Shown: positions 3,444 through 40,642, counted from the first letter of the stretch. The stretch is DNA of 42,148 bases from Octopus bimaculoides (GCF_001194135.2 NC_069000.1:16057716-16099863); one strand, 5' to 3'. Program-made: numbers and translations. Notes: a model not told the origin generated them from the letters alone.

Positions 3444-3723
3444 ATTCTATAAATGACACCAGCTGAAGGTATTGAAATTGGGATGACATGTGGTGTATAA
3501 TTCTTTTGGCTTCAAACTGCAAGTTAGAATCGTGCATGTACAATACGCCATGCAGGACAATATATGTAAAAACCATTAATAATTATCCAAGGTTTCGAGA
3601 ATGATTTACCTTCTGATGATGTGAGCTATATTACGTGTTGGAAACCAAATCCCACTTACGAAGCAGTAGCAGCTTGTTCATGTAAAGCTTACAAACGAAC
3701 TTCAACAAGGAAGATGCTTAAAA
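3444..3723 (+). pseudogene. Pseudo V-like Ig exon psiV-1
   Basis: Homologous to the intact V exons (MTPAEGIEIG...DLPSDDVSYITCWKPNPTYEAVAACSCK...KMLK) but has stops, frameshifts and a 15-nt deletion; ends at GTAAGT (3724). Confidence 0.85.
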
Positions 3724-6762: not shown

Positions 6763-6834
6763 GTACTGGAAAATGCGTTTTAATGTCAACGATGTTGTCA
6801 GCTTTAATTTCACTGTTAATGGATAACAGGGAGT
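6763..6834 (+). CDS. Candidate 72-nt leader exon of Ig gene 1 (ATG 6783; MSTMLSALISLLMDNRE)
   Basis: Acceptor TTTCAG| and consensus donor |GTAAGT. Its phase-1 end joins the V exon in frame. Same length and open frame at 25231-25302. Only a mediocre signal peptide. Confidence 0.4.
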
Positions 6835-9800: not shown

Positions 9801-12800
9801 CTATGTTGTGTGTTGCTTGCACATAGTTTTTTTTTCTTACTTCATTACTGTTTTCTATCACCTCATTTGGCTTGGGCTGTCGTTCACGCTTTGATTGTTA
9901 TTTTCAATATAAGAGCGCATGGCCTAGTTGTCAAGGTATCGTAGTCACGATCGTGAGATCATGATATCCATTTCTCGACTGTGTGGTGCATTGTTTTCTT
10001 GGGCAAATCATATCTTCTCACGTTGCTCTTCCATCACTTCGATACCCGACGTGTGGTACACCTATTCAGACACCATCGATTTGATGAATGGAGTTTGTTA
10101 ATGTACAACATATACTTCTGATCACTTTAACAAATTATTTTGCAGGGTGTTCAGCAATAAATTGCTGAACCTTCTTTCTCGGCCTACGAGAGCCTACCAC
10201 CATTCATTCATTCATTCATTCATTCATTCATTCATTCATTCATTCATTCATTTTCATTTTATTCAATGCCATGACTCTCCATATTATTATCTTCTACGCT
10301 ATTGTTCTATAGCTGCAATTATATATTTCTCTGATTTACATGTCGCCCGTATTTTTTATTTATTTATAGCTATTTATGTTGTAGAAATGACACCAGCCGA
10401 GGGTATTGAAGTTGGAAAGACAATTAATATATCAATAACATGCTTGCTTGTGTTAAAGAATCTTCTTGACTTCAAACTTCAACAAAACGGAAATACAGTC
10501 GTACATATACAATATTCCCGTATCATCCACGGATACAGAAAATTAAATACTAGCAACGGTTTCGACTGTGATTTACCTGTTGCTAATATAGATTATATTA
10601 CCTGTTGGAAACATAAACCCACTTGCAATGATGTAGCAGCTTACTCATGTAAAACATTCAACGCAGTTTCAAAAAAGAAGGTTTTTAAAGGTTGGTGTTA
10701 CCCGGCTTTTGCACTTATTCAGCCCCAGAAATATTCATTTTCAGTAGCTGTATTTATTTTGTGAATTTCTAATGCACTGCTGAGCGCAGATCTGCAGATT
10801 TTGACACGTGCAATATTTTGCACATTCCAAAATCCTTTGGTTTTCTGTTCTATATTGAATAAAAATACTCTGTCCATGGTGTACAATACCTAGTTGTTCT
10901 ATTCTCTGTAGAATGAAGTAGCAGTTAGGATAATTGATGTAGAAGGACAAATATTTTAAATTAATGTTAAACAACTTAATGTTAAAAACAATTCATTATG
11001 TGAATGACTAAATTAAGTTAACTTTTTTATAATTTTCCAGTCACGGTTAGATTATGTTTTAAGATTTAGGAATAAGATTAAAGCATATCCTCGGTAGTCT
11101 CCATATAGCTGCTAAATATAAGATTCTCTCCCTGTTACTTTTCATTTTTGATGAATTATAATTAACTAAATTTCTGAGATCCACCCACCTGTTTCTGACC
11201 AAAGTCAGTAATTTACAAAAAGATTGTTGTAATCAATAAAGGTACAACTTTAAAAATAATATTTCTTGGGTTATAGCAAGCAGTTGACTATTAACTTTTC
11301 ATCCAGCTATATATCTGATCATCATTTCCATGACTATCAGATTTAGCCTAAGATTCACAAATCAAGTCTAATAAAACCGAAACAGTTTTGGCGATTTTCC
11401 AGTAAAACTAAAGACTATATTCTGGCTTTACTACAGTCCCTATTTAATATTGGGTTGTCTCTCTTTTTTGTTTTATGTAGCAGTGACTGAAATTAATAAT
11501 TTATCCTGACAAGAAAGTGTTTTATTTTTAATTATGATTTATTGTGTCTTGAATTTCCATAAGAAGTTTGCTATCACCCATTACTACTAAGTTTTCTTAA
11601 GCGTCCCTGGGTATTTTCTGTACGGCGTGTAAATTGGAATTTGGCTTATATTTTGATGTTTCTTTTAAAATCATTCCCAAGAGATCTATTATTATAGGGA
11701 TCATTTCTGTTTTCCTTTCCGTCATTCTAGGTATCTTTTTGTTTCCCAATTTTTTGATATTTGGATAATTTTTACATTTCGTTTAGAAATAAATCAGCAC
11801 TTGTTAGGACTAGTATTTTGGTAAAAAAAAAGTAATTCATTTCCTACTAGCCTTGGAAAATTTATGGTCGATGACATTGATTTCCACGAGTCAGTGGACT
11901 GACAAATCCCAGTCTGTTGTTACTTGCAGAGGTTTTTATTCAGATGTAAGTCTAAATTACCGCCATTTATGTTTGTATTATATAAAGCCAATTTAATTTC
12001 CAAGCAATTTGAAACAACCAACTTTGTCACGTCTATTGTATCCATTCTTTGTTAAATATGGTTAACCAGTGACCATATGTAATGTTTCTCTTACCAATAT
12101 GCATATATTCCGCAGATATTTAATGCATTCTGTTTCATTACATGAGTTTAGTGGTTTCGAGTTAGGAAATCTTTGATTCTGTGCCGCACACAAAAGTCCA
12201 ATAGTGCTAGTTTTCGATTATATTTTTCAACCATTCAGCAGATTTTTAAAAATCTATTTTCACGTCCTACAGTACTGTCATGCATTCACCATAATTTTAA
12301 CTGTCTAGTAGCATGATCTTTGTTTTTTACACAATCACCGTTGTTTATGCCCCTTTGTATTCACATTTTATCAAACAAATCAGCCGCTGTGACGTATTTT
12401 CTAACTATTTGCTACTTTGAAGACAGAGAACGGTGTTTTCTTTCTGATCATGTCTTTAAGCTATATATATTTGCTTTATATTCTTCCTTATTAGTTATAT
12501 TTCTAATTCCATTGTGCATATTTTATAAGAGTTTTATAGTTTCATAATGACCATATATCTCTGTGTTAGAGGGAGAGATAATCTTTCTTGTCAGATTTCA
12601 AATTTGGGGTGGTGTATTTTTAATGCAGTATAGATTTCATTTTTCTTATTTCCTCTCTCAAGTCTTGATATTTCATCTTGCGTCCAGTGGAGAATATTAT
12701 AACTAAAGCTAATTGCCTGATACTTTTTAAAAATATTTAGCTCGTCTGTTAAATTATTATACTTGTATTGCTAAGATTAGGTTGAAATTTTATTTGACGA

Positions 12801-15800
12801 TAGCATAGAATTAGACCTCAGAAAGCGAAAACAAAAATGAACGTCACACATGGATGCTACAATGACAAACACAGCAGTAATAACAATGAAGAACAATACC
12901 CGCTGCAAAATCACTACAAAATAGTGAAGTTGCTTGCTACCGTCGTTGTCAAAATTCTGAGAACTCAAAGAGGTGCCAACCTACCAAAACTAACATCAAC
13001 ACAGCATGAACACAATTGCACACATAAGCCAAATTACATCATTTCCTTTTGTTTTGCATTAAAAGATGACGAGAAGTAGGAGTACATCGAAGTATGGCAA
13101 ACAATCATCAAAGTAATTACCATAGCATCACTGAGAAAAAAGAAAAGGAAAGTAGACCAAATGCCAAAAGAAAATAACTCAAAATTCTCTGTGACTTAAT
13201 CAACCAACACAACTATCATAAAAAAATACCAACTATAAAACATACAGCATATCCTAAAACCATAAGTACGTTGATCTCAACCCTGATTATATCACCCTCA
13301 AAGCATCCAGGAAATCATCTGTTATGAGTGATTAATAGAATATCAGATATGTTTTATTGCATAATATTTTGCTGCTGCAAAAGCTGACACAAAGCTAACT
13401 TGAAGTGCTGAATCTCTGAGAATACATCAATGACGTATATTTCTCATTTGGAGATTCTACAGGATTCACTATACAATGTTAGTAGGCAAGCAGTTGATAA
13501 TAGTGTTAAACTTGGCTATTGATGAATTTGACATTTTCAACGTTACATAGCGATTTACATTGTTTTGATTGTCATGGCTTTGAAAAGTGTTGATGATTAA
13601 AGAGTTTTCCACAATAATTTTGTTTGTTAACAAACAGAACGAATGTGTAAATCAATACGGATCGTCAACAGCTTGTATGTATCTGTAACCATGAAACATT
13701 ACTTACAAATAATTCAATGAAAGTTGCTGAAATGATTAACGTGGATGAGAAACAATTACACATTGTAAACAATACTAGGTTTATAAAACAGACAAGTAAT
13801 TATTGCTGAAGAGAACTTTACTTATATATATATTCTTACTTATCTGTTCCCACTCTTCTACTTATGCTTGTTTATTCTCTCTCCTACTTATTTTCCTCCC
13901 CTTTCTATCAGCCACCTCTTCTATATATATATATATACATATATANNNNNNNNNNNNNNNNNNNNNNNNNNNNNNNNNNNNNNNNNNNNNNNNNNNNNNN
14001 NNNNNNNNNNNNNNNNNNNNNNNNNNNNNNNNNNNNNNNNNNNNNNNNNNNTATATATATATATATATGTATGTATTTATGTATGTATGTATATATATAT
14101 CTTTCTATTAGTCTTTTGTCTTCTGTCTCTCTCTGTCTTTCCCTCTGTCTCTTCTGTTTACTTTTCTTTCTCCCACTCTTCCTCTTGCTACGTTTTTTAC
14201 TCTCTTTTCAACTTATTCTTCTTCCCTTCCTGTCAATTCTGTATCAACCCTCCTCTCTATCTATGAGTCTCGGTTTTTCTCTTTTTTTTTGTCTTTTCGC
14301 TTGCGTTTCCCTCTTACACTCTCTCCTCTTACTGCTGTAATTTCTTCACTTTCTCTCTTACATTTCCTCCTGTATCTCCTTAACATGCATTACCACCCTT
14401 TCTCTCCTATCTTTTCTGCCTATTCTTCTGTACCTCACAACACTAGAGAAGTTAAAGCACCCACCAGCTAATGTCTTCTCTCTGGTTATGTCTTTTCTCT
14501 TGTTTTCGTTGATTATCGCCAAATTTAATTAATACCTTGTCCGAATTATGATTATTTCATTAAACTAGTACTTTTCCTCATTTTCACTGAGCTCTGTAGT
14601 AACCTGAATAGCGTGAACAGAGGTAGGTATAGATGTCATTTTGTGAGGTAACGTGGTTGCTTGATCTGTTAGAAATACCAGTCAGATTGCCCTCAAATCA
14701 CTCCCTACAGTCTTTCAGAAAAAAGGCATTTGGTGATATATTTCTAGACGTACTGTATCAAAAATACAAAGAGGTTGACCAAGCTGAAACATCTTTGATC
14801 GTAGGTCTGCTACTTCAGGACTGGTCTAGGGTTAAATAATCAGATAGTTTTATGTAACGTATACATTTATGTAAAGGGTGTATATTATACTCTAGTTAAA
14901 CGAATGTATTGGTCAAGTTTTATAGTATTATAATTAATTATTATAATAATTAATAGTTTTTTAACATTATTCACTTTAGAACCTCTTCATATTCACATTT
15001 CACTTGGTTTCCTTCTCTATTATTATTATTATTATACAATGTGGCTCTGTTGTATCTATTTGCTTCTCTGGCAGCGTTCCATCTGTTGCCTCAATTTTTG
15101 TCCATTTCCGTTTTCTTCACTAGTTCTTTGTGTTTACCTGGGCACTTCCCTTGCCTAACTATTATGTAAGAGATTTGAAAAAAATGCTTTATTATTATCT
15201 CTCATTTATTTCAAATGCAAAAATATTAATGTGTTTATATTGTTTAAAAAATTTGTACAATATGTAATATTGTTTGCATTGCTTTTTGCCACATTGGCCC
15301 AAGTCAAATAAAGTGAAAAGCCTCCGATACAAAATAAAATAATTTCTGAAATTACATATTGCTTGAAAAATTTGTACAATATGTAATATTGTTTGCATTG
15401 CTTTTTGCCACATTGACCCAAGTCAAATAAAGTGAAAAGCCTCCGATACAAAATAAAATAATTTCTGAAATTACATATTACTTGATTAATACAAAATATA
15501 TCCAGCATGAAGAACAATTCGAGTGGTGTTAACCATTTTAGTTTAGTATGAAGATTGTAGTTTATATTAGTGAAACCACCCAATAGTCTTAGTAATATGT
15601 AAAGCATATTGTTCTAACATTTTGCTATATTAGATCGTTTTCTTTTCAGCAAAATCTACTTTAGAGAGTCTGCAAATTGTCAAGGGAGTTAAGGTGAAAG
15701 GCAGACAAGTAAGAACATTTAGATGTGTAGCAAATGTTGGAGCACCATTTAAATCGCATGTATCCTTTGTGTGGATTGTAACAAAACATGGTAAAACATA

Positions 15801-15966
15801 TAATGTCACCAAAAACGAGACCATGCCAAATACTTCGAGCTGTTATTCTCGGGTGTCATCCGATTATACTTTCACTCCACAAGCCAAAGACGTATCTGGC
15901 ACAAGTATCACATGTAAAACAAATTTTGGCTTACTTACCAGACGAATCTCCGCTAAGAGAAGGTAA
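6783..15966 (+). CDS. Ig gene 1 model: join(6783-6834?,10370-10690,15650-15966); ~229 aa V-like + C2-like Ig protein, probably secreted
   Basis: Phase-1 GT-AG junctions keep one open frame through two Ig folds to TAA. The first exon is tentative. Confidence 0.65.
7055..7745 (-). mobile_element. Internally deleted mariner element
   Basis: ORF 7229-7522 is a mariner N-terminal HTH (STIQKWATEFRKGREFFEDEP...DRRLTI). C-terminal HRWKKCMDCKREYVEK. TIR-like GTCGGCCTATGAACTTTTCCAGCCGACTTTCGTA at ~7712-7744. Confidence 0.85.
8058..8210 (+). repeat. Degenerate (TTAGGG)n-like tract
   Basis: TTTAGGGTTTAGGGTTAGAG...GTTAGGGTTAG...CTTAGGGTTCGGG...TTTAGGG. Confidence 0.7.
9915..10035 (+). mobile_element. 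Degenerate tRNA-derived SINE
   Basis: GCGCATGGCCTAGTTG...GATCGTGAGATC...GTGCATTGTTTTCTTGGGCAAA...CACGTTGCTC; absent from the unit-2 paralogous flank. Confidence 0.55.
10201..10252 (+). repeat. (ATTC)n microsatellite upstream of V exon 1; paralog at 26235-26270
   Basis: Perfect CATT repeats, about 13 and 9 units. Confidence 0.95.
10370..10690 (+). CDS. Intact V-like Ig domain exon, gene 1
   Basis: TTTATAG| acceptor and AAAG|GTTGGT donor; 321 nt, phase 1-1. GKTINISITC (B strand) and PTCNDVAAYSC (D-x-A-x-Y-x-C, F strand); sequons NIS and NTS; no stops. Confidence 0.85.
11990..12730 (-). mobile_element. Dong/R4-like LINE fragment in the V-C2 intron
   Basis: Minus-strand remnants such as IIHWTQDEISRLER and a C-terminal Cys region; homologous to 4990-5480. 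Confidence 0.55.
13270..13810 (+). repeat. Paralogous intronic segment, second copy at ~23835-24410
   Basis: Shared CCTGATTAT.TCACCCTC, GCTGCAA.AGCTGAC, TCAACAGCTT.TAT.TATCTGTAAC, TGATTAACGTGGATGAGAAACAATTA. Confidence 0.85.
15247..15479 (+). repeat. Near-perfect 119-bp tandem duplication
   Basis: AAAAATTTGTACAATATG...CTGAAATTACATATT occurs twice (TTTGTAC at 15252 and 15371), with about one internal mismatch. Confidence 0.95.
15650..15966 (+). CDS. Intact C2-like Ig domain exon, gene 1 (terminal if TAA 15964-15966 is used)
   Basis: TCTTTTCAG| acceptor in phase with the V donor. TFRCVANVGAP...FVW...SSCYSRVSSDYTF...GTSITC; sequons NVT, NET, NTS; ends ISAKRR*. Confidence 0.85.
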
Positions 15967-16689
15967 ATTAATTTTGTATTCTTACAAAAAGTAAATTAAT
16001 TTTGTACTTCTTTCTTTGATTAGTGTTTTCCCTTTTCCTGTAACAACGGTTATTTAGCCTCAGCTCAACCGCTGAGAATCGACGGTATTCCGCGTATGAC
16101 AATCACATCCGTTCTTTTTTGAAGGAAACAATTTTGTTAGCTAATTATAAAATTTGTTAGCATCGCTGTGTGGAAAAGGTAGAGAGTAGCTAATGTCATC
16201 TCTTGAATAATTGAAAAAAAGAAACGGATTTAGATGCCATGGTGCAACGAAATTCAAAGCATTATATGCGAGTCCGAAATGAGTACCATACCGACTGCAA
16301 CAAGTTAATGTGAGAAAGGGAAATGTATATATCTGGGACTTCATCAACTTCGTTGCTTCATCTAGATAGATATAACTTAAATGTATTACCCGGGGCAGCC
16401 GGAAATGAACGAAGTTGTGCGAATGGATAGTTCTCCCGTCCTTGTAGTAAACCCACGCGAGACTGTTAGGAGCTTAAAGGGTGAAAGACCAAAAATTTGG
16501 GGTAAAAGCACATAAGAAATAATAGTAGAATGAGGAAATTATATGAATAGTTGTGTTGAATACGAATATATATTTTGAAGGAAAAGAAAGAAAACTAGAT
16601 AGATAGAAAGAAGAGGAAAGCAGCAAGAGGGAAGAAGAAAGAAGAAAGGAAAGACAGTCATAAAGAAATAAATAAAAGAATAATTGATT

Positions 16690-17060
16690 TTTCCTTTTTA
16701 TCCAATTCCTTTCCTTCTATTTCCTTACCAAAATACTTACAACATGCCTTGCCGTCCATCCAACTCCAGACATCACATCTGTAAATTAACGAAATAAATT
16801 GCTTCCTGACAACCTACAATGTTGCAGGGATCCAAACAGACCCGCGTAGGAACTATAATATAAACTTATGCTTATCTTTATTTCCCTACATTTTCCCTAT
16901 ATTTTCTGTGAAATGACAACTTTTAGGAAGTTACTTATCAAATCTAAAGGAAGGGGTTGGAGCTCTAAACATCTCAATAACAGTTTTACATGAATTTGCA
17001 CACACATTATTAGAGATATGTATGTCTGTATGTATGTATGTATGTATGTACGCATGTACG
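16690..17060 (+). repeat. Paralogous segment, second copy at ~33020-33400, ending in (TATG)n
   Basis: About 7 substitutions plus one ~30-nt indel in ~320 nt (hand count); a ~190-nt stretch is identical. Confidence 0.95.
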
Positions 17061-17377
17061 TATGTATGTATATCTATGTATCTATCCATCTATTTATCTA
17101 TTTATATTCATAAACACACACATACAAACGCGTGCACACACACGTGCGCACATGTAAATATGTATACATGTAATTTTCTCCATAACCTAACTATTGTTTC
17201 TCTATATGATGGCAATCCTTCCCTTTTACAGAGTGCTGTTTGCTTAACATCTCTTCCAAAATTTCGAAGTCAACTTCACAGTCAACTTTATTGGTAATAA
17301 ATATATATATTTCCTCTATATAATGTACTGAGATCTTTGTTCAGTAGTTACTGTTTGTTGTTTTTCATTATTAAGTA

Positions 17378-17490
17378 TTTATGTATGTATGTATGTATGT
17401 ATGTATGTATGTATGCATGCATGTATGTGTGTGTGCATGTATGTATGTATGTATGTATGTATGTATCTATCTATCTATTTATCTATCTAT
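17378..17490 (+). repeat. (TATG)n/(TATC)n microsatellite
   Basis: Direct sequence. Confidence 0.95.
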
Positions 17491-17491
17491 T

Positions 17492-18868
17492 CGGAAACAA
17501 TTATTCGAAAAACACTTATTCGAATTGACAATTTATTGAAAGAAAATTATTCGAATTGACGAGAGTTTGAATTGTTTGCTATTTTGAACATGCCCCATTG
17601 ACAGATACAATACTGGAAGGTGAAAGACAGAAAATACTTTGCTTGTGCTGATTAACATGGAATGTATATACCTTTTAAAGCTGGCTGGATGTATTGATAG
17701 GGAAAATGGTAAGCCCATAGTCAAAATTGATGGTTTCGTATTTGTGAAAATAAGCAAATTAGAACCAAACTCTATTGGAAGTGCAATAAGTTTGCATCGT
17801 ATTGTAAATTCTGTGCAATAACTAATGACAGTGAAGTGGTTAATGTTTCACGTGCGCATAATCATTCTGGTGATTCCATAATCATAGAAGTGCGTACTTA
17901 TATGAATGGAGTAAAACAAGAGGCTAAAGAAACCCGTTGTTCCCCGCATTATATGATTTGTACTGTTGCTTCGTAATTAAGTGAAAACGTAGCGCAAGCT
18001 TTACAAGCAATAAGATCTATAAGAAGGTCTGTACACAATGTAAAACATTACATGCTGTTAAGAATAACCTTACCATTTTAATAGTTTATGCTTTACTTCT
18101 TGATTAGAAAGCCGACACAAACAGAAAATTGGTTTCAAAAACTCAGTCAAGCGTTCTTAATTTACAAGTTACGATATTAACGTCAGATTTTGAGACTTTA
18201 TTAGATTCCAATATATATATATTTCAATAGTGAATACTATTCTGGATTATTTTAAAGATGTGTGGGTTGGTCATCCTGCAAGATATCATAGCCGAAGCCC
18301 TACGTTCGAGATATTTATGTGGTCTTGCTTTGAAAAGTCAATCTTGGTTTACCGAAAACTAACAACGCCCTTGAAGGATGGCATAGAGCTTTTTTACAGC
18401 AAGTGTCATCCCATCATCCCTCAATATGGATATTCGTACACGCACTTAAAAGAACAGGACTTGCAAGAAATTAATATTGCAAAAATATGAGCAGGTTTCA
18501 AAATATTAAGAGAGCCAAAAAGATACCGAGACGCAAATGAAAGACTCAAGAAATTTATGGAATCCTTTAACGAGTACTCTTCAGCAGTTGAATATTTATG
18601 TAGGGTAGCAGATAAATTAGCTTAAATTTTTTTTAATCATTGCAAATAAAGAGATATGCTTATTAAATAAAAATCATTTGTGTACTGATTTTTAATTTCA
18701 TCATTTTTGTTTAAATAAAATAAAAAAAATTACAATAATTAACATTTCGTATAATTGTCCTTTTGAATAATTTTCATTCATACAATTTTCCATTCGAATA
18801 AATGTTTTTCGAATAATTGTTTTCGAATAATTGTTTTCGAACAATTATTTTCGAACAATGTTCACACA
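17492..18868 (+). mobile_element. MULE/Mutator-like DNA transposon, deleted
   Basis: Inverted ends made of repeated AACAATTATTCGAAAA / TTTTCGAATAATTG. FLYWCH-like GKPIVKIDGFVF near 17710. C-terminal LDYFKDVWVG...MWSCFE...RTNNALEGWHR motif. Confidence 0.75.
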
Positions 18869-18869
18869 A

Positions 18870-19590
18870 ACCTTCAATTATAGGCCACAGTGGGAGTTCG
18901 TTGATTACTTCAGTATCGGTAGTAGATTTTTGATTTAGAACAAATTTAGTGTTCAACCCATCTTTCTCAGAATTTCAACTTTTCTACTTGAGAGTTTTAT
19001 TTTGTCGCTAGAGAGAAAAGTTTGTGTGGCTCCCTTTTGATTGTCATACAGTGCTCTAAGTTTGTGAGAGTTATCATCCAGTTCCAGTTCTTGGGCTTTT
19101 TTACCCTCCAAGAAATTTTCATCTCATACAATTTTTTCTGTGTAGTTTTCTTAGAGGAAATGTATAGGGATCTGAGGGTTGGTGAGTTTTTGTCCGAGAT
19201 CCGTATCTTGTGTCTCTTGTGCAAAGTTTGTAGGAGAAGTTTAATTTGAGAATCGTTTTCGTCGAACCAAACTTGGTGCTTGCGTTTCACGAATCCTAGA
19301 ATTATTCACTAGATGATTTGAGTCTGTCACGAATATTGTGCCACAGCACTTCATGGTTGTTACACTCCTCTATTTCTGCAAGCTTTGAGTTTAAATGCAT
19401 TTCAAAATGTCGTGTCGTTTCTGGATTTTTTAAAGAAGGGTCATTTATTCTCGGATGTATACTACGTCTCAGTATCCTCTTTGTATATGCTTGCTGCGAA
19501 CTATTTCGTGATCCGTTTCAGCAGGCAGACAAATACGAAAACATTTGGAAGTATTCCTGATCTAGTCACTGGCTCATGGTAGAATATGTT
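18870..19590 (-). mobile_element. RTE/BovB-like LINE fragment (endonuclease-RT linker)
   Basis: LNVASLKNPETT...KRKHQVWFDENDSQIKLLL, typical of RTE linkers. Confidence 0.8.
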
Positions 19591-20219
19591 ATNNNNNNNN
19601 NNATAACCCGAGAGAGTTAGGGGTTGAGGATCCAACCCACTAAGGGATAATATCTATCCAATATACTGCTGAGAGGGTACCCAATTATTCTTACACTAGT
19701 GTTATACCAGATGCAATAAGTGAGTGCGGGTAAAAGGGGGTTACTTTACCCTAAATTTCTATAGCAATATGAAAATGGAGGAGAATATGAGGTACTCATC
19801 AACTTGCAGACACTGTATTCCGTTGATTAATCTGTTTATTTTATAAATAAATTGACAAAAAACACAATATACAGACACTTATGACATACCATGTCATATC
19901 AACAATTAAGATTTCAAATTTAAAGGACATTTAGTAATTGGAGAGGGACAAGTTCTTACAGCTGTTTCGGCTTAGCATTGGCATGCCCCATTCTATCATT
20001 ATAGCTCCCGTACGCTGGAGTAAGTAGTAGATAAAAATGATGTAATGGTGGTACATGCATGATTCGCTAGGCCTCTTCAGATATTTACAAAATTCAATAT
20101 GAATTTTGCCAAATTTTAATACAAATATATAATAAGAATAAAAATAAAAAATAAAAATATTAAAATTAAAGGCACATAAAAAGTAAATTTCTATACAAAA
20201 TGGCCAGAAATATGTAAAA

Positions 20220-20750
20220 GAGAAACCGACCTACAAGGTAACAGTCGAATTTCAACACGAACTTCTTGCTCGGTATGGTGTGCCCGATAGCATAATCTCC
20301 GATAACTACACAATTCACGGCGAATGAATTTAAGAATTTTTGCAAGAGGTACTCAGTTGAACAAGTCACTAACCCTCAGTATCTCCCAAGACCGAACGGA
20401 CAAGCTGCACGCTTTGTGGACACGTTCAAAAGGGCACTGAAGAGATCCAGAAATGAGTAAGTGCATGACACAATTCGCATTGACACAATTCCTGAGAGTT
20501 TACCGTGTAATACCAAGGCCTAATACCTTTTTCAGGCGAGTCGCCTACTAAACTGATGTTCGCAAGAAAAACTAGGTCAGTTTCGCACAAGTTATTACCT
20601 GGAAGAAAATTAAAACTAGGAGAAACACTGAAAATACGACCAAATATTTTAAATCTGGTGATAAGGTGTTTTTACGAGTGTACAGAAATGGAAAAGAAGA
20701 TTGGGAAAACGGCAAAATAATAAAACGAGTCAGCAAAATGACAAACATTT
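20220..20750 (+). mobile_element. Gypsy integrase remnant
   Basis: ARYGVPDSIISDN...FTANEFKNFCK...PRPNGQAARFVDTFKRALK, followed by the GDKVF tail. Confidence 0.85.
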
Positions 20751-20829
20751 AGTTCTTTTTCATATATTGAAAGGTATTTAGGAAATATATTAGCTAGGAC
20801 AAAAAGAAGCAATAAAACTCTGCACTGTA

Positions 20830-22440
20830 AATCCCTTGATAATTCTTTTCTTAAGATGAGAAGTGCTTTGACGATCGAGATTTTCTGGAGTGTATACCTT
20901 CATCTCTTCTGACTAGAAGCAATATATAATCTCCCATTATAGCAGTATCCCATCGTCCTTGGTATTTTCCTTCCATAGTTGCGATGTCCTGATGAAATCT
21001 CTCACCATGCTCCTCACTGACATCACCTAAGTTTTCGGTGGAAAAATCTAGGTGAGAGTGCAAAAAATGAACCTTTAAGGACATACAACCCATTTTCTTG
21101 ACGTTTTTAATAAGCTTTGCTACCAGCTGTTTGTAATTAGGAGCCTTGTGATTTCCTAGGAATCCACGAACTACATCACGAAATGCACACCAAGCTTCTT
21201 TTTCAACTTTTGTCATCGCTCTTTCCGGTTTTTTCGACTTTAACATTGCATTTACTTGGGGCCCAACAGATATGCCACTCTTGATCTTAGCCTCAGATAG
21301 CTTTGGAGACATAAGACAAATTTCTTGAAAAGCTTCTCCTCTAAAATTTAAGGCCTTCACAAACTGTTTTACCAATCCGAATTTGTTTTGAAGTAGAGGT
21401 AATAAGATTTTTTTGGAATCTACTAGAGGCTGTTTGAGAACGTTTAACATTCCTGGCTGCAGTTCCACTCATGGGGGCCAACGTACTCTCTTGTAATAAT
21501 TATCATCAGCTCTGCTGTCCCATAAGCAAAGGAAACATGAATATTTTGTGTATCCCCCTTGCAAGCTAAGCAAGAAGGCAAGCATCTTGAAATCAGCACA
21601 AACATCCCACTTGAACTCAGCGTAATTTATTTTGTCGAAAAGTTCTTTGACATTATCGTAATTTTCTTTCTTCTGTATGGAGCGTGCAAGAAACAAAGAA
21701 GGGTATTTATTTCCATTGTGGAGCAACACTGCTTTGAGACTTCGTGTTGAGTTTCCTGCATTTCTTGGCTGCTGCTACTGGTTGACTCTTCAGATGAAAT
21801 ATTTTCTGGTGGTAGTGGTACTCGTAAACTGTCATCATGTGGGACAGGGGCTCTAGATGATGGTATGTCTGGATACTGAAGAGCTTGTCTTCCTTTCACT
21901 TTTCTGTACTTTGTCACATCCATCATACAAAAGTAACAGTCATCGTGATGGTTCTTTGGCTCTCTCCATATCCTTGGAATGGAAGAAGGCATTGACCTTC
22001 CTGTACCTCTTAACCACCCTTCTAGAGTAGATCGACAGCTTCCACATATCACATGTGGGGCCCATGGTTTGTCCTGGTCACCCATGGGCATTCCGAAATA
22101 GAGTCTGTACGTTATCCACAATTTGGTACCGTACACGATCTTATATAATACCTGTTTTTTTTTTTTAGTATAATAACGACACACATAGCAAAATGTATCT
22201 GGAGAATTTTTACATACTCTTAGTAGCCATCCTGAAAGTAGCAGAACTTAGACATACATTTAGTAGCGGAACATTATAACAATACCGAATATACAATAAC
22301 ATTGAAAGTCGACATATTTTTTTAACTGTTGATGATACAAAAAAAATAATTTCATTTTTGGAATCAGCAGAAAAAATGGATTGATAAACAATTAAAAAAA
22401 TACAAGAAACAAATTTTTTTTTTGATAATTGTTACGTTAT
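20830..22440 (-). mobile_element. Chapaev3-like (CMC) DNA transposon, internally deleted with stops
   Basis: CKNSPDTFCYVC; YFGMPMGDQDKPWAPHVICGSC...WREPKNHHDDCYFC; SLKAVLLHNGNKY; GGYTKYSCFLCLWDSR; KVHFLHSHLDF...SEEHGERFHQDI. Family assigned from memory of these motifs. Confidence 0.65.
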
Positions 22441-22525
22441 GTTATCTTTTCTTTCACCATTGTTATATAACTGCGATTATATATTTCTCTGATTTATATG
22501 TTTATCTCCTTTGTTTTTTATTTAA

Positions 22526-22823
22526 ATTCTATTAATGGCACCAGCTGACGGTATTGAAGTTTGGGTGACTTTGTAACATGATGGTATGTGGTATTTAATA
22601 TTTTGACTTCATGCTGCAACAAACCGACGCTGTGCATATACAGTACGTCATAAAGGACAGCATGCGTGAAAACCATTAATAATTATCCAAGGTATCGAGA
22701 ATGATTTACCTTCTGGTGATGTAAGTTATATTATGTGTTGGAAAGCAAACCCCACATACGAAGCTGTAGCAGCCTGCTCATGTAAAGCTTATAAACGAAC
22801 TTCAAAAAGGAAGATGCATAAAG
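22526..22823 (+). pseudogene. Pseudo V-like Ig exon psiV-2
   Basis: MAPADGIEV...ENDLPSGDVSYIMCWKANPTYEAVAACSCKAYKRTSKRKMHK|GTTAGT with stops and frameshifts. 5' flank cut by the transposon; a ~590-nt downstream deletion relative to psiV-1. Confidence 0.85.
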
Positions 22824-23304
22824 GTTAGTGTTATCCGGCTTGCAGTTATTTAGCTACATTACTATCAATTTTCAACAGATTTATTTTTATTGCGTATTTC
22901 TACAGCACTGTCGAGTAAGCGTCCCAGGGTATTTTCTGTATGTTGATTAAATTGGAGTTTGGCTTATGTTTTTGATATTTCTCTTTAAATCACTCCTAAG
23001 TCATCTTATTATAGTGATTGTTTCTGTTTTAATCTCTTACATTCTAGGTGTCACTTATTTGATTTCTGTATATTTAGAACACTTTTCTATTTCGTTTAGA
23101 AATGAATTATCACTTGTTGGGACTAGTATTTTTCGTAAAAAAGGAATTTCCTTCCTGGTAGCCTTTGAATGTATCAGTGTCGATTAGCGTTGACCTCCAG
23201 GGCTATGTGAACTGACACATCCCAGACTGTTGGTTTTTTTCATTTGCAGAGGCCGTTTTCTGATGAAAGTTTACACTACCTCATTTTTGTATTATATACA
23301 GGCA

Positions 23305-23630
23305 ATAAGGCGGTGAGCTAAGAAAATTGTTAGCACGCTGGGCGAAATTGCTTTGCGGTATTTCGCACGTCGCTACATTCTGAGTTCAAATTCCACTGTC
23401 CCCTCCCTCCCACCTTTAGTAGTAAAGATCATATAAAATCAATAAGACAGCGAGCTGGCACAATCGTTAGCACGCCGGTCAAGAAGCGCTTTGCAGTGTT
23501 TTGTCCTTTTACGTTCTGAGTTAAAATTCCACCTAGGTCGACTTTACCTACTATCCTTTCGGGGTCGATGAAATAAGTACCATTTAAGATGTAATCGACT
23601 AGCCACTCCCACACCAAAATTTCAGGCCTC
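23305..23630 (+). mobile_element. SINE pair orthologous to 5510-5925, opposite orientation
   Basis: Reverse-complement match that includes the non-SINE flanks. Confidence 0.9.
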
Positions 23631-24459
23631 GTGCCTAATATAGAAAGGATTATATAAAGTTAATATAATTTATTAGTTTCTTTTGCATATTCTTAGTTTA
23701 TGTATGTGTATGCAAATATAGTATTGATATATCCCATTTATGTTCATTAGAAATTAAATAAATAAAGAATTTTGACATGTACGAATATTCATTTGCCCCA
23801 CTGTATTTACTATATATATTGCAGTTCCAGTGTTGGGTCTCAAATCCTGATTATCTCACCCTCCACACTTCAAAGGAACTCTCAGTTAAAAGAGATTAAT
23901 AAAATATCAGGCATTTTTATTGAATATTTTTTTGCTTGCTGCAACAGCTGACTCGTTGTTAACTATATGATGTGTCTGTGTGATAACATTAATTACATAT
24001 ACGTATTAATCATTTGAAAACACTACAGGGATCACTAATAAATGTCAATTGAGAAACGGTTGTTATTATTATTAAATTTGCTTATTGATTACTTTGTAGC
24101 GATCTCTCTTTGTTACGTAGTGATCTCTCTTTGTTACGTAGCGATCTCTCTTTGTTTCGACTTTCATGAATTTGACAAGTGTGAGTGATTGAAGAGTCTT
24201 CCCTGCATCATTTTATGTATGGTGCATACCAAAACGAAAGACTAAATCAACATGGATCATCAACAGCTTATATCTATCTGTAACGAAGAAACATTACTCA
24301 TAAATGATTCATTCTTAATTGTTGAAAGTGATTAACGTGGATGAGAAACAATTAATCACTATTAACTATAATAGTATTGTAAAACTGACAGGTGATTATT
24401 GTCTTTATTATAGTTTTATGTGCATATTATACACACATAAATACATAAATACATACATA

Positions 24460-24710
24460 CATGCATGGTGGTTGTCTACTCCTTAAACAGAGTTTGACCA
24501 CCTCCTGCACCTACACCTTAGCCCTTTCTGGCTTTTTAAACCAGACAGTGTTTTGAAAAAACACCCACACAAATTGCACCTCTGATTTGCACTACCAATA
24601 CCTGCAAGTAAGTTCTGCTCATTGTGGATCCTAACATGTCTTTTAAGACCCCCATTGGATTTGCAAACCCTCTGGCACACACCACATTCAAACGTGTGCA
24701 CAGACATATA
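24460..24710 (-). mobile_element. Probable RTE-type LINE 3' end with C2H2 zinc-finger remnants
   Basis: FECGVCQRVCKSNGGLKRHVRIH followed by a broken second finger and a microsatellite tail. Confidence 0.5.
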
Positions 24711-24748
24711 ATCAGAATAGCATACATACATACGTACATACATACTTA

Positions 24749-24749
<1 letters not shown>

Positions 24750-24810
<61 letters not shown>

Positions 24811-24820
24811 CACACACACA
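24750..24820 (+). repeat. (CA)n microsatellite
   Basis: Direct sequence. Confidence 0.98.
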
Positions 24821-25230
24821 TTATCCGAAATGTACAATATTATACATCCATCACAACCGATCTTACCGTTCAGTTTCCTGCTAGGCTTTCCGCAGAGTGT
24901 TAGGTAATAATCCGATTATGCACCCCTGCGCACATCAGAGGTAGCCGATATGAAATGAATTATGTTGAGAGCTCCCTATTGGAGGAGCATGCACACATCC
25001 GTTTTGTAGTTGTGGTGAAAAAGATGATGGGTTGAGTTATGAGCTATGTCCCTTATTACCAAAACTTCACCCTCGATTATTCACGCTTAAATATTTTCCA
25101 ACTTTCTCTCAAGTTTTACTCTTTTACTGTTTAACCATCATTTTTACCTGAATCATACATGTCTTTGGTCATATTTCAGTTACAGGAAGCCGAATTTTAA
25201 TTTCAACGATATCTTTTGGTCATATTTCAG

Positions 25231-25302
25231 TTACAAGAAGCCGCATTTTTATGTCAACGATGTTGTCAGCTATAATTTCACTGTTAATGGATCACAGGGA
25301 GT
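25231..25302 (+). CDS. Candidate 72-nt leader exon of Ig gene 2 (ATG 25251; MSTMLSAIISLLMDHRE)
   Basis: TTTCAG| ... GAGT|GTAAGT; paralog of 6763-6834; phase-compatible with the V exon at 26390. Confidence 0.4.
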
Positions 25303-28300
25303 GTAAGTTAAGATTAAAGAAAATATTTTCTTTTCGGCTCAAACACACAATCTTCCTCACTTCGTTATTTGCCATGCTTTCCGTATTTCTATGCCACCCA
25401 GACAAGTGCTTAGACACGCGCGCGCGCAAACACACACAGAGGCACCTATACATGCATGCATATAGATGTACAACACTGACTTTCCTGACATTAATGGTCT
25501 GCAAACGTCTCATAACATGCACTTATTTACCCTAAACTAGAGGTACCTGTAAGAGGGTCGGCTGAAAATTTATAGGCTGATAAAGATACTCTGACGGAAA
25601 ATAACCAAATGAAGTTCGTTTTTCAACGTATTCCTCCTTGCAGTCCACACTGTTTCATTTGGTGTTGCAGTGTTTGGATTCCATTCGTGAAGAAGCTTTC
25701 ATCCAACAGCAGATATGACGTCGTCCAGACTGCGATACTGGTACCCAGCCTAGTCATTCTTCATGGTGTGGAACCAATGGCTATTCTGCTGGGGTCAAAC
25801 TAGGAGAATCGTGAGGGAGATCAACCAGTTCAAAGCCACAGTCACTCAAAATCGCCATTAAAAGCAAGGATTTGAGAACTGTTCATGGGATTTTGGTCTT
25901 GTTAACCTTTCTTAACTACATCAGCATTTTGAAATAAAACTCTCCATTTCTGATGTGGCCATTTTGAAGATAGGTCAAGAAACGCAATGTAATTTCTATC
26001 TCGAAAATCTGAGGCTGTCACCTTCCCTGCAGATTAAAAGACTTTGGTCTTCCTTGCTGCAGGTGTGGAGACCCGATGTGTGGTATACTGTATTCCTATT
26101 CAGAGAACGTTGATTTGATGAATGGAGTTAGCTAATGTACAACACATACTTCTGATCACTTTAAAAAATTATTTTGCAGGGTGTTCAGCAAAAAATTGCA
26201 GAACCTTCTTTTTCGTCCTACGAGAGCCTACCACCATTCATTCATTCATTCATTCATTCATTCATTCATTTTCTTCAATGCCATGACTCTCCATATTGTT
26301 ATCTCCTTCTGCGCTATTGTTTTATAACTGCTATTCTATAATTCTCTCATTTACTCTCATTTACTTGTTACCCTTGTTTTTACTTATAGCTATTGATATT
26401 ATAGAAATAACACCAGCTGAGGGTATTGAACCTGAAAAGACAATTAATATATCAATAACATGCTTGCTTGTATTAAAGAATCTTATTGACTTCAAGCTCC
26501 AACGAAACGGAACTACAGTCGTACATATACAATATTCCCTTGACCATGCGAAATACAGAAAATTAAATACTAGCAAAGGTTTCGACTGTGATTTACCTGT
26601 TGCTAATATAGGTTATATTACCTGTTGGAAACAAAAACCCACTTGCAATGATGTAGCAGCTTACTCATGTGAAACATTAAGCGCAGTTTCAGAAACGAAG
26701 TTCATTAAAGGTTGGTGTTACACGGCTTTTGCACTTATTCAGTCCCAGAAATATTCATTTTCAGTAGCTGTATTTATTTTGTGAATTTCTGCAGATTTTG
26801 ACACGTGCAATCTTTTGCACATTCCAAAGTCCTATGGTTTTCTATTTTATATTGCAATGAAAATACACTGAGTACAATATCTAGTTGTTCTATTCTCTGT
26901 AGAATAAAATAGAAGTTAGGATTATTGATGTAGAAAGACAAAAAAAATTTCAATTATTCACTATTAAACAACTGTATGTTAAAAACAATTCATTATGTGA
27001 ATGACTAAATTAGGTTAATTTTTTATAATTTTCCAGTCACGGTTAGATTATGTTTTGAGGATAAGATTTAGGGATAATATTAAAGCATATATTCGGTAGT
27101 CTCCATATAGCTGCTAAATATAAGATTCTCTCCCTGTTACTTTTCATTTTTGATGAATTAAAATTAACTAAATTTCTGAGATCTACCCACCTGTTTCTGA
27201 CCAGAGTCAATAATTTACAAAAAGATTGTAGTAATCAATAAAGGTATAACTTTAAAAATAATATTTCTTGGGTTATAGCAAGCAGTTGACTATTAACTTT
27301 TCATCCAGCTATATATCTGCTCATCATTCCATGATTATCAGATTTAGCCTAAGATTCACAAATCAAGTCTAATAAAACCGAAACAGTGTTGGCGATTTTC
27401 CAGTAAAACTAAAGACCATACTCATGCTTTACTACAGTCTCTATTTAATATTGGGTTGTCTTTCTTTTTTTGTTTTATGTAGCAATGACTGAAATTAATC
27501 ATTAATCCTAACAAGAAAGTGTATTATCTTTAATTATGATTAATTGTCTTGAATTTCCATAAGAAGTTTGCTATCACCCATTACTACTAAGTTTTCTTAA
27601 GCGTCCCTGTGTCTTTTCTGTACGGTGTGTAAATTGGAATTTGGCTTATGTTTTTGAAGTATCTTTTAAAATCATTCCCAAGAGATCTATTATTATAGGG
27701 ATCATTTACCTTGAGTGAAGAAAAGTGTGAATTTTTCTTACCGGAAATGAGATATTTAGGACAAGTCATTGACAGAAACAACTTGACCTTTCGAGGGCAA
27801 TAAAAAATATGCCTCCTCCTACTAATATAGCGATCTTACAGGCATTTTCACGACATGCAAATTACCAAATTATATCCCAAATATGCATAAGATTAGGGCT
27901 CCACTGAATAATTTGCTGAAAAAAGATATGAAATGGAATTGGTCAGAAAATTGTCAAAAGGCATTTGGGAAAATTTTTTAAAATATTAATATTTGATTTG
28001 TCTCTAGCTCACTTCGATCCTGCAGCGGAGATTGCTGTATAGAGAAGTAATGTTACATAAATATATCGAATGTAACATGAAGGCGGTGGTCCATGCTCAC
28101 GTTCCCTCATATCAGTAGAGTAAAATTAGAGTCAAATCGAAGAAAAAGCTCTACTGATCATTTTTACTGTGAAAAGATTTCAAAGATTTTTGCACGGTAG
28201 AAGTTTTCGGCTACAGACTGATCACCGATTGTTATTATCGATATTTGGGTCGAAAAAAGGAATTTGTACCTATACTGCTAATAGATTCCAACGCTAGACT

Positions 28301-40229: not shown

Positions 40230-40642
40230 TGTGGTGATAGACATTATCACACATCTGTGTGGACTTGTAGGATTGTTATATTGTTAATGACGTCAGAGGA
40301 CGTTTCTGAATCTTGCGTTTTGTAAACAGAGAAATAAAATGTACGCCTTGTGAAGTCATTGATTTTATCTTTGCTTCCTTAGATTATATATCCAAACATT
40401 TTAAGGATATAAAAGTACATTACATACGTTTGATAATTATAAACAAATTCTTTGTGCAGGTTTTTCAGCAAGAAATTGCAGAACATTCTTTCTAGGAGTT
40501 CGAGATACTACAATTGTCATTCACTCATTCATCTTTTTCAAAGCCATTGCTCTCCATACTATTATCTTCTTATCCATTGTTATATGACAGCGATTATATA
40601 TTTCTATTATTTATATGTCCCTCTCCTTTAGTTTTCATTTAG

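What the first reader, a model, noticed from the sequence alone, without database searches (positions are those of the whole stretch)
10370..26710. Excess of amino-acid change between the two intact V exons
Hand count: 36 of 321 nt differ; 24 codons are non-synonymous and only 4 purely synonymous. All Cys, the Trp and the frame are conserved. Changes cluster at the N-terminus, the C'-C'' region (RIIHG vs LDHAK) and after the F-strand Cys, which roughly match CDR2/CDR3-type loops. The C2 exons show 15 non-synonymous vs 4 synonymous codons. The intron just downstream of V differs by only about 4-5%. Inference: diversifying selection on a ligand-binding face. Caveats: only two sequences, and gene conversion could have homogenised the intron.
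Basis: partly seen in the sequence, partly recalled or inferred. Interest (0 to 1): 0.72.

Follow-up and report, generated by a model that had tools for sequence, protein, structure and literature searches.

The report
Fast-evolving octopus antibody-like gene cluster
Two neighbouring octopus genes encode small antibody-like proteins of an undescribed, octopus-only family, and three loops at one end of the first domain change amino acids about five times faster than neutral drift, which suggests a family under pressure to recognise changing targets.

Summary
The window is Octopus bimaculoides DNA. It holds two tandem paralogs (A, B), each built as signal-peptide exon, V-like exon, then C2-like exon.

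For this pair alone that is not an excess. There are 251 non-synonymous sites against 67 synonymous ones, so dN/dS is 1.23 (bootstrap 95% interval 0.58-3.7). P(>=24/28) under neutrality is 0.27. The C2 pair gives 0.76. Eleven of the 36 differences sit in one 13-nt patch. Noncoding divergence is uneven (2.5-19%), so the 5.7% downstream intron is not a clean baseline.

The inference survives once more sequences are added. I recovered 12 intact V exons from the same cluster and from O. vulgaris, O. sinensis and a read-archive contig.
- Site models reject near-neutrality: M2a vs M1a LRT 66, p=4.5e-15, with about 15% of sites at omega about 5.5.
- The result holds without A and B, without the patch, with separate trees per partition, and against simulated nulls.
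- Selected sites fall in the loops equivalent to antibody CDR1, CDR2 and CDR3 of a confident AlphaFold V+C model.

Neither assembly gap touches the compared exons; gap 1 is intronic, gap 2 intergenic. Function is unknown, and ligand recognition is inferred.

The parts
6763..6834 (+). Signal-peptide exon of gene A. ATG at 6783; the exon ends ...GAG T|GTAAGT in phase 1, and its T joins CT of the V exon to make Ser.
   Evidence: tblastn of P0001/P0002; sequence read.
10370..10690 (+). V-like exon of gene A (LOC128250269 isoform X1). 321 nt, phase 1/1.
   Evidence: 100% match to P0001; splice sites; V-type 9-strand fold in the AF2 model.
10519..10533 (+). Hypervariable C'-C'' loop codons 50-54 (RIIHG). 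11 of 13 nt (10520-10532) differ from copy B.
   Evidence: Posterior P(omega>1) is 0.89-1.00.
10691..11706 (+). Downstream intron block, 5.7% diverged from copy B (26711-27707), with 11 indel events.
13946..14051 (.). Assembly gap inside a (TA)n microsatellite in the V-A to C2-A intron.
15650..15963 (+). C2-like exon of gene A.
   Evidence: Confident beta-sandwich in AF2. Pfam C2-set_2 E=1e-3, below the cutoff.
19593..19602 (.). 10-N assembly gap in intergenic sequence between gene A and the next pseudo-V exon.
25231..25302 (+). Signal-peptide exon of gene B (ATG at 25251).
26390..26710 (+). V-like exon of gene B (UniProt A0A0L8FP14). 24 of the 36 A/B differences are derived on this lineage.
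26539..26553 (+). Hypervariable C'-C'' loop codons 50-54 of copy B (LDHAK). This version is unique, and no donor was found in about 250 kb of related loci.
30207..30535 (+). C2-like exon of gene B.
31340..31498 (+). Sequence homologous to the last coding exon of the O. sinensis ortholog (77% aa identity). It is present after gene B and has no counterpart after gene A.
3444..3728 (+). Degenerate pseudo-V exon (frameshifted), one per repeat unit.
22517..22825 (+). Degenerate pseudo-V exon upstream of gene B.
40634..40951 (+). Degenerate pseudo-V exon of the next repeat unit.

Best explanation
The interval holds two tandem paralogs, 16 kb apart, of an octopod-restricted and so far uncharacterised immunoglobulin-superfamily gene family in Octopus bimaculoides (CM046620.1, about 16.06-16.10 Mb). 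Each gene is a signal-peptide exon, a 321-nt V-type exon and a C2-type exon, joined by ordinary phase-1 GT-AG introns. The products of A and B appear to be small secreted V+C2 proteins. Other family members carry a transmembrane helix and tail, or a C-terminal hydrophobic anchor.

The cluster grows by tandem and inverted duplication of a unit of about 16-20 kb: pseudo-V, then SP, V, C2. After duplication the framework stays under purifying selection. This covers the Cys, the CWK motif, the D-x-A-x-Y-x-C motif and the strand cores (about 22% of sites at omega about 0.09). A small set of surface positions is repeatedly replaced (about 15% of sites at omega about 5.5). These positions are just after the B-strand Cys, the C'-C'' loop, the F-G loop and the N-terminus. 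They are the equivalents of antibody CDR1, CDR2 and CDR3, which sit at one tip of a V domain.

Shown here:
- gene structure
- family membership
- predicted fold
- site-specific omega above 1
- recurrence of the same sites in independent lineages

Inferred:
- that the tip is a ligand-binding face
- that the driver is recognition of fast-changing targets, such as pathogens or other co-evolving partners, through a germline-encoded repertoire

The A/B pair on its own shows only omega about 1.2. It is one unremarkable sample of this process, and copy B is the faster lineage.
For: Identity and gene structure:
- Searches show the window equals L005:6288-48435.
- Six intact V exons and six intact C2 exons lie in the 104-kb O. 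bimaculoides cluster.
- The same unit repeats three times in the gap-free O. vulgaris locus.

Fold:
- AF2 with a 28-sequence alignment gives pLDDT 89.6 and pTM 0.79, with 9 strands in domain 1.
- The top Foldseek hits are Fab light and heavy chains, TCR, CD4 and VCAM-1, at E about 3e-6.
- A family profile hits Fab light chains at E=5e-5.

Selection:
- M0 omega is 0.97-1.14 for all sequences and 1.4-1.5 for close paralogs.
- LRTs are 48.1, 50.3, 47.3, 66.1, 37.2 and 9.4.
- Loop enrichment gives P=0.004 for strict DSSP loops and 2e-6 for Kabat-like segments.
- Selected codons carry 5-7 different amino acids among 12 sequences, beside invariant neighbours.

Constraint:
- The exons have no indels, where 7.6 would be expected.
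- Invariant family residues are F92, C94, C106, K108, C113, D115, Y119 and C121.

Exon versus intron:
- Among O. bimaculoides paralogs, dN is 0.13-0.29 while downstream introns differ by 0.03-0.077.
- Between species the introns differ by 0.22-0.24 and dN is 0.14-0.26.

Anchored relatives.
Against: - The codon models are my own implementation, not PAML or HyPhy. They are checked only by 40 null simulations.
- The models assume one synonymous rate for all sites and single-nucleotide steps. The C'-C'' patch looks like multi-nucleotide change, which can inflate omega, although the LRT stays at 18.6 without it.
- Trees are neighbour-joining trees, and paralogs in a cluster may exchange sequence. 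Only a simple PHI-like test and partitioning address this.
- Global omega is not significantly above 1 (p=0.11-0.13).
- Site mapping uses the model's secondary structure only. No coordinates or solvent exposure were available.
- There is no expression, polymorphism or binding data, so function is unknown.
- The V exon matches no Pfam Ig model.
- The first Cys is missing in some relatives.
- Synonymous divergence in the exons (0.05-0.20) tends to exceed intron divergence. Some intron homogenisation, or a higher exon mutation rate, is therefore likely.
Confidence: 0.75

Rival explanations
1. Relaxed constraint. A and B, and their neighbours, are redundant duplicates drifting neutrally. Omega about 1 then reflects loss of function rather than adaptive change.
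For: Pairwise omega is 1.23 for V, 0.76 for C2 and 1.00 combined, none different from 1. Global M0 omega is not significantly above 1. Dead V exons do exist in the same cluster. There is no expression evidence.
Against: - The nearly neutral model M1a is rejected by LRTs of 48-66.
- About 22-37% of sites have omega about 0.08-0.1.
- All 12 V exons keep their frame, splice sites and invariant Cys/Trp/Tyr residues.
- The exons have zero indels, where 7.6 would be expected.
- The truly dead pseudo-V exons show what decay looks like here: multiple frameshifts and stops.
Confidence: 0.07
2. A mutational or recombinational artefact. Multi-nucleotide mutations, micro-conversion patches and concerted evolution of introns create an apparent non-synonymous excess, and an apparent exon-above-intron pattern, without selection for diversity.
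For: - 11 of 13 adjacent nucleotides differ at 10520-10532, and BLAST prefers compensating gaps there.
- Introns of all O. bimaculoides paralogs are 92-97% identical, while the O. sinensis intron is 76% identical. At the protein level, however, A is closer to O. sinensis than to V3-V5. This indicates homogenised or young noncoding sequence.
- Noncoding divergence between A and B ranges from 2.5 to 19%.
Against: - The LRT remains 18.6 (p=9e-5) without codons 50-54.
- Each third of the exon, fitted with its own tree, is significant.
- The PHI-like test is null.
- No donor for either patch version was found in about 250 kb of family loci.
- The same codons are hit in the O. vulgaris/O. sinensis set and in the set lacking A and B.
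- The codon tests do not use introns at all.
Confidence: 0.12
3. An assembly artefact. A and B are two haplotypes, or a mis-joined scaffold, rather than two genes. The comparison would then be allelic or spurious.
For: The cluster is gap-rich: six N runs in the window and 25 in L005. Gene A spans a gap.
Against: - A and B differ by 6-12% in alignable noncoding DNA and by kilobase insertions.
- Each copy has its own pseudo-V, SP, V and C2 in the same order.
- Gap-free O. vulgaris has three such units in tandem, and O. sinensis shows the same unit flanked by pseudo-V exons.
- All compared exons lie kilobases from any gap.
Confidence: 0.03

Closest known systems
Teleost novel immune-type receptors (NITRs) and similar germline multigene V-type receptor clusters (from established knowledge, not tested here)
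   Same: Tandem clusters of genes encode an N-terminal V-type Ig domain followed by a second Ig domain. Diversity is germline-encoded and concentrated in CDR-like loops. Turnover by duplication is rapid, and pseudogenes are interspersed.
   Different: NITRs are vertebrate proteins with a J-like motif, and they are transmembrane with ITIM or charged-residue signalling. The A and B products have no TM segment, the family has no detectable sequence relationship to NITRs, and its V domain lacks the C-strand Trp.
Amphioxus VCBPs (V region-containing chitin-binding proteins) (from established knowledge)
   Same: These are secreted invertebrate proteins with V-type Ig domains. They show hypervariability at a restricted set of positions and form a multigene family.
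   Different: VCBPs have two V domains plus a chitin-binding domain. Here the architecture is V+C2 with no further domain: Pfam finds nothing else.
Biomphalaria FREPs (molluscan IgSF-fibrinogen lectins) (from established knowledge)
   Same: Diversified IgSF proteins in a mollusc, linked to recognition.
   Different: FREPs carry a C-terminal fibrinogen domain and are reported to diversify somatically. No fibrinogen domain is present here and there is no evidence of somatic change.
CD80/CD86-, CD2/SLAM- and antibody light-chain-type V+C two-domain architecture
   Same: The predicted fold is a V domain followed by a C-type domain. The top Foldseek hits are Fab chains, TCR, CD4 and VCAM-1. There is a weak C2-set_2 (CD80-like) hit on exon 3, and the family profile hits Fab light chains.
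   Different: Sequence identity is 11-18%. There is no RSS, no J segment and no rearrangement signal (the V exon carries its own G strand and a splice donor). Three extra invariant cysteines (C94, C106, C113) are present.
'Accelerated evolution' gene families with conserved introns and hypervariable exons, e.g. snake-venom PLA2 isozymes (from established knowledge)
   Same: Among paralogs within the species, exons are 2-4 times more diverged at non-synonymous sites than the adjoining intron.
   Different: The protein fold and the biology are different. Here the intron baseline is uneven and may be partly homogenised.

Membership tests
Immunoglobulin superfamily, V-type (V-set) domain | Two-sheet beta-sandwich with nine strands, including C' and C''. 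| tested here: met
   The AF2 model (28-sequence MSA) has pLDDT 92-98 over residues 31-130. Its strands are 28-35, 47-55, 61-66, 69-77, 82-88, 92-94, 101-109 and 118-122, plus a G strand. Foldseek gives probability 1.0 to Fab, TCR and CD4. This is a prediction, not an experimental structure.
Immunoglobulin superfamily, V-type (V-set) domain | B-strand and F-strand cysteines about 65-75 residues apart, with a D-x-G/A-x-Y-x-C motif before the F-strand Cys. | tested here: met
   C52 and C121 are 69 residues apart, and the motif reads D115-V-A-A-Y119-S-C121. Y119, C121 and D115 are invariant in 28 members, and C52 is present in at least 90%. C52 is absent in P0006 and in P0008 (the Logan read-archive contig).
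Immunoglobulin superfamily, V-type (V-set) domain | Conserved Trp in strand C. | tested here: not met
The C-strand position is Phe62 (DFKLQ).
Immunoglobulin superfamily, V-type (V-set) domain | Significant match to the Pfam V-set or other Ig HMMs. | tested here: not met
   The V exons have no Pfam hit at E<=10. Of 28 family members, 2 hit PF00047 'ig' (best E=4.8e-5) and 1 hits Ig_3. UniProt labels two distant members as V-set or Ig-subtype.
Ig C2-set domain (exon 3) | Seven-strand sandwich with a Cys pair and a strand-C Trp, plus a match to the C2-set HMM. | tested here: inconclusive
   The sandwich is confident in both AF2 runs, and C160, W176 and C223 are conserved. PF08205 C2-set_2 scores 19.6 bits (E=1e-3), below the 21-bit cutoff.
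Rearranging antigen receptors (Ig/TCR) | A V gene segment ending in a recombination signal sequence, with separate J segments. | tested here: not met
   The V exon includes its own G strand and ends in AAG|GTTGGT, which is spliced to C2. CACAGTG occurs 5 times in the window (3.8 expected by chance), and none is near a V exon.
VCBP / FREP (invertebrate diversified IgSF) | An accessory chitin-binding domain (VCBP) or fibrinogen domain (FREP). | tested here: not met
   No such Pfam domain appears in any of the 28 members. The products are 208-420 aa and consist of V+C2, with or without a stalk, TM or tail.
Gene family under diversifying selection (operational definition) | A site class with omega significantly above 1 in nested codon models, robust to recombination, with sites that cluster spatially. 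| tested here: met
   LRTs are 48-66 with omega 5.5-6. Controls are, and clustering. The implementation is my own, and there is no model of synonymous-rate variation or multi-hit change.

The most novel reading that the evidence does not exclude
Octopods carry a lineage-specific, germline-diversified repertoire of V-type Ig recognition proteins. Secreted and membrane-anchored V+C2 genes sit in tandem arrays, with CDR1/2/3-like hypervariable loops. This would be a cephalopod counterpart of VCBPs, NITRs or FREPs used in immune or other non-self recognition. The repertoire may be extended by long-range alternative joining of one V exon to different C2 exons: RefSeq isoform X2 joins V-A to a C2 exon about 68 kb away.
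Probability: 0.25. Interest if true: 0.85.

Novelty: new member of a known kind. Interest (0 to 1): 0.6.

Why it matters
Variable recognition molecules in invertebrates have been found in only a few lineages. Examples are snail FREPs, amphioxus VCBPs, arthropod Dscam and urchin 185/333. Cephalopods have long lifespans for invertebrates and complex tissues, yet I know of no diversified receptor family described for them. My literature searches found no paper on this family or on any of its gene identifiers.

This family is an octopod-only V+C2 Ig family. It has both secreted and anchored members, lies in tandem arrays and shows omega of about 5 at CDR-equivalent loops. That makes it a concrete, testable candidate: the genes, the sites and the predicted binding tip are all defined.

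If the driver turns out to be reproductive or some other co-evolution rather than immunity, the family is still one of the clearer cases of site-specific positive selection in a cephalopod gene cluster.

There is also a methodological point. A raw 24:4 codon count and a single conserved intron overstate what one pair of sequences can show.

Tried and rejected
- **Pfam on the V exons:** no hit, so the 'V' label could not be taken from sequence alone.
- **AF2 with only 6 close sequences:** the V domain came out below pLDDT 50. A 28-sequence family alignment was needed.
- **Collinearity across gap 1 using the paralogous V4 gene (L002):** invalid, because L002 has an N run at the homologous place. 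Gap 2 in copy A and a 10-N gap in copy B fall near the same homologous point, so that could not be tested either.
- **DNA for further relatives:** P0006 and P0007 are not on record. The P0009 and P0010 loci are too long to fetch.
- **Search for a gene-conversion donor of either version of the 15-nt patch** in L001-L006 at up to 4 mismatches: only the family-typical relatives of the A version turned up (V5 at 2 mismatches, V3 at 4), and nothing for B.
- **Global omega>1 test on close paralogs:** not significant.
- **First simulation run:** timed out and was repeated single-threaded. The first Nei-Gojobori script also timed out.
- **Pfam on the large ORFs at 20854-22247(-), 7232-7543(-) and 39728-40129, and on the exon-3-like sequence:** nothing found.
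- **RSS heptamer scan:** at chance level.
- **Literature searches by topic and by six LOC identifiers:** nothing on this family.
- **Haplotig, pseudogene and rearranging-receptor readings:** considered and rejected (see the rival explanations and membership tests).

Full report
**Source and gaps.** The window is AT-rich eukaryotic DNA with six N runs. A protein search identifies it as Octopus bimaculoides. The V+C2 translation of copy A is 100% identical to LOC128250269 isoform X1 (P0001). Copy B is UniProt A0A0L8FP14, annotated 'Ig-like domain-containing protein' (P0002). The window equals L005:6288-48435 on CM046620.1.

I tested the gaps first.
- 13946-14051 sits inside a (TA)n microsatellite, with TA repeats on both flanks. 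It lies in the intron between V-A and C2-A, 3.3 kb and 1.6 kb from those exons.
- 19593-19602 is intergenic.
- No family coding sequence lies near either gap, so frame across the gaps is not an issue.
- Continuity could not be proven, because the paralogous site in the V4 gene is also a gap.
- The order SP-V-C2 is the same in gap-free copy B, in O. sinensis and in O. vulgaris.

**Gene anatomy.** Each gene has three coding parts.
- A signal-peptide exon: A 6763-6834, B 25231-25302, ending ...GAG T|GTAAGT.
- A 321-nt V-like exon: A 10370-10690, B 26390-26710. Its leading CT completes a Ser codon, and it ends AAG|GT.
- A C2-like exon: A 15650-15963, B 30207-30535. Its leading CA completes an Ala codon.

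All introns are phase 1, as is usual for Ig-domain exons. Upstream of each gene lies a frameshifted pseudo-V exon (3444-3728, 22517-22825, 40634-40951). The same defects are present in O. sinensis. The repeat unit is therefore pseudo-V, SP, V, C2, spanning about 16-20 kb.

**Checking the observation.** The hand count is exact: 36/321 nt, 24 non-synonymous and 4 synonymous codons, and five Cys and the Trp conserved. The C2 count of 15 N / 4 S also holds over 102 codons.

Normalised for site numbers, the picture changes.
- V has 251 non-synonymous and 67 synonymous sites, which gives dN=0.128, dS=0.104 and omega=1.23.
- The bootstrap 95% interval is 0.58-3.7, and Fisher p=0.33.
- Under neutrality, P(>=24/28 non-synonymous) = 0.27.
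- C2 gives omega=0.76 and the two exons together 1.00.
- Eleven differences lie in one 13-nt patch (10520-10532). Without codons 50-54, omega=1.07.

The 'quiet intron' is only partly right.
- The downstream intron is 5.7% diverged overall, but it ranges from 2.5% to 11% along its length.
- The upstream intron is 10.2% diverged, and 19% in the 76 nt beside the acceptor.
- The C2 flanks are 6% and 13%, the signal-peptide region 12.5%, and the 3' blocks 3.3-4.6%.
- dN exceeds these baselines (p=0.0008-0.008) only when the patch is included.

Two features of the pair are non-random. The exons have no indels where 7.6 would be expected (P=5e-4), so the reading frames are maintained. Nine of the 24 replacements fall in 17 loop residues (P=0.003).

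**More sequences.** The 104-kb locus L005 holds further intact V exons:
- V0 at 797-1117
- V3 at 66620-66940, minus strand
- V4, which is LOC106876203, at 84074-84394, minus strand
- V5 at 97241-97561

It also holds six intact C2 exons. O. sinensis gives one V exon (L001), a read-archive contig (the 'Logan' sequence, L003) gives one, and a gap-free O. vulgaris locus (L006) gives four. L006 contains three complete pseudo-V-SP-V-C2-exon 3 units. All 12 V exons keep their frame and their AG/GT sites.

Pairwise omega among O. bimaculoides paralogs is often above 1: 2.27 for A-V5, 2.41 for V4-V5 and 1.97 for B-V4.

**Codon models.** I wrote a Goldman-Yang maximum-likelihood implementation with F3x4 codon frequencies, neighbour-joining trees and all branch lengths optimised.

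| Data set | Test | LRT | p |
|---|---|---|---|
| 8 V exons | M2a vs M1a | 48.1 | 3.6e-11 |
| 8 V exons | M8 vs M7 | 50.3 | 1.2e-11 |
| 8 V exons | M8 vs M8a | 47.3 | 3.1e-12 |
| 12 V exons | M2a vs M1a | 66.1 | 4.5e-15 |
| 10 V exons, no A or B | M2a vs M1a | 37.2 | 8.6e-9 |
| O. vulgaris + O. sinensis only | M2a vs M1a | 9.4 | 0.009 |
| 8 V exons, codons 50-54 removed | M2a vs M1a | 18.6 | 9e-5 |
| 5 O. bimaculoides exons | M2a vs M1a | 22.9 | 1.1e-5 |

- For 8 exons, M0 omega is 0.97. M2a puts 12.7% of sites at omega 6.0.
- For 12 exons, 14.7% of sites are at omega 5.45 and about 22% at 0.09.
- Thirds of the exon, each fitted with its own tree, give LRTs of 11.8, 26.1 and 7.0. A PHI-like homoplasy test is null at p=0.38.
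- Forty data sets simulated under the fitted M1a model give LRTs of at most 6.3, and one of them exceeds 5.99.
- Global omega for close paralogs is 1.4-1.5, not significantly above 1.
- The C2 exons show a weaker, more diffuse signal: M0 omega about 1.3, and LRTs of 14.6 and 8.2.

**Structure and site mapping.**
- With a 28-sequence family alignment, AF2 gives pLDDT 89.6. Domain 1 has nine strands and domain 2 seven.
- Foldseek's best matches are Fab light and heavy chains, TCR, CD4 and VCAM-1.
- A family profile reaches Fab light chains at E=5e-5.
- Pfam does not recognise the V exon, and C2 scores just below threshold.
- Sites with P(omega>1)>0.8 are residues 30, 46, 53, 55, 78-82, 84, 125 and 130 in P0001 numbering.
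- These sites lie just after the B-strand Cys, in the C'-C'' loop and at the start of the C'' strand, in the F-G loop, and at the N-terminus.
- Six of the 12 are in strict DSSP loops (P=0.004). Ten of the 12 are in CDR1/2/3-like segments (P=2e-6, with the segments defined after seeing the sites).
- These codons carry 5-7 different residues among 12 sequences, next to invariant neighbours.

**History of the pair.** Polarising the 36 differences with the other exons assigns 24 to lineage B and 11 to lineage A. The A version of the patch resembles V5 and V3. The B version is unique and has no donor in the loci held.

Downstream introns of all O. bimaculoides paralogs differ by only 3-7.7%, while dN is 0.13-0.29. 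Against O. sinensis the intron differs by 22-24% and dN is 0.14-0.26. The copies are therefore either young or homogenised in their noncoding DNA, while their coding loops have diverged faster than the surrounding sequence.

**Family.** An exhaustive profile search finds 40 cluster representatives. Every one that carries a name comes from Octopus bimaculoides, O. sinensis, O. vulgaris or Argonauta hians, and all are 'uncharacterized'. Members include secreted forms, forms with Thr-rich stalks, forms with a TM helix plus cytoplasmic tail, and forms with a C-terminal hydrophobic tail. Literature searches by topic and by gene identifier found nothing on the family.

**Verdict.** The counts are right, but as a two-sequence statistic they do not exceed neutral expectation. 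The ligand-binding role and the biological driver remain inferred.

Noticed in passing
window 3444-3728, 22517-22825, 40634-40951; L005 63270-63576(-); L001 9716-10012, 27243-27495; L006 32763-33130, 61250-61676, 80216-80572: Every repeat unit carries a degenerate V-like pseudo-exon upstream of the signal-peptide exon, about 35% aa-identical to V-A. It has the same frameshifts in O. bimaculoides and O. sinensis. It is 83-90% identical in DNA between species, which is more conserved than the region around the live V exon (about 82%). Why a dead exon is kept so well is unexplained.
   Followed up: partly
L005 89976-90308 (about window +83.7 kb) relative to window 10370-10690: RefSeq isoform X2 of LOC128250269 joins V-A to a C2 exon about 68 kb downstream. 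It skips C2-A, all of gene B and two oppositely oriented family genes (V3, V4). This is either a chimeric gene model or long-range alternative V-to-C2 joining.
   Followed up: partly
window 20854-22247 (-): Three adjacent long ORFs (205, 101 and 206 aa) lie on the minus strand between gene A and the next pseudo-V exon. None has a Pfam hit. This may be a decayed mobile-element gene.
   Followed up: partly
window 13946-14051 and L002 11727-12682: Gap 1 lies inside a (TA)n/(TATG)n microsatellite. The homologous place in the paralogous V4 gene intron is also an assembly gap, so this intron segment seems to be systematically hard to assemble.
   Followed up: yes
window 19582-19613: The 10-N gap is flanked by ...ATGTTAT and ATAACCC.... 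The five bases on each side (GTTAT / ATAAC) are reverse complements, which hints at an inverted junction or a scaffolding join.
   Followed up: no
window 18190-19102 vs 36631-37542: This is the most similar block between the two units (3.3% substitutions over 915 nt), against 7-13% elsewhere. It could be a recent conversion tract or a young repeat inserted in both.
   Followed up: no
window 15955-16010 and 31340-31498: Copy A has a tandem duplication of about 30 nt around the C2 donor, so GTAAATTAATTTTGTA occurs twice. Copy A also lacks any counterpart of the exon-3-like sequence that follows copy B and the O. sinensis and O. vulgaris genes. The two genes therefore probably have different C-termini.
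   Followed up: partly
window 10203-10252 vs 26237-26264: A (TTCA)n microsatellite in the intron upstream of the V exon is 22 nt longer in copy A.
   Followed up: no
P0006 (LOC128250265), P0008/L003: Some family members lack the B-strand cysteine (ITI or MRI instead of ITC) while keeping the other four invariant cysteines. The canonical Ig disulfide is therefore not universal in the family. The roles of the three extra cysteines (C94, C106, C113) are unknown.
   Followed up: no
window 7235-7821 and 12562-13618: These segments recur at 88-92% identity in the paralogous locus L002, in both orientations. They are interspersed repeats that account for much of the size difference between the A and B introns.
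   Followed up: no
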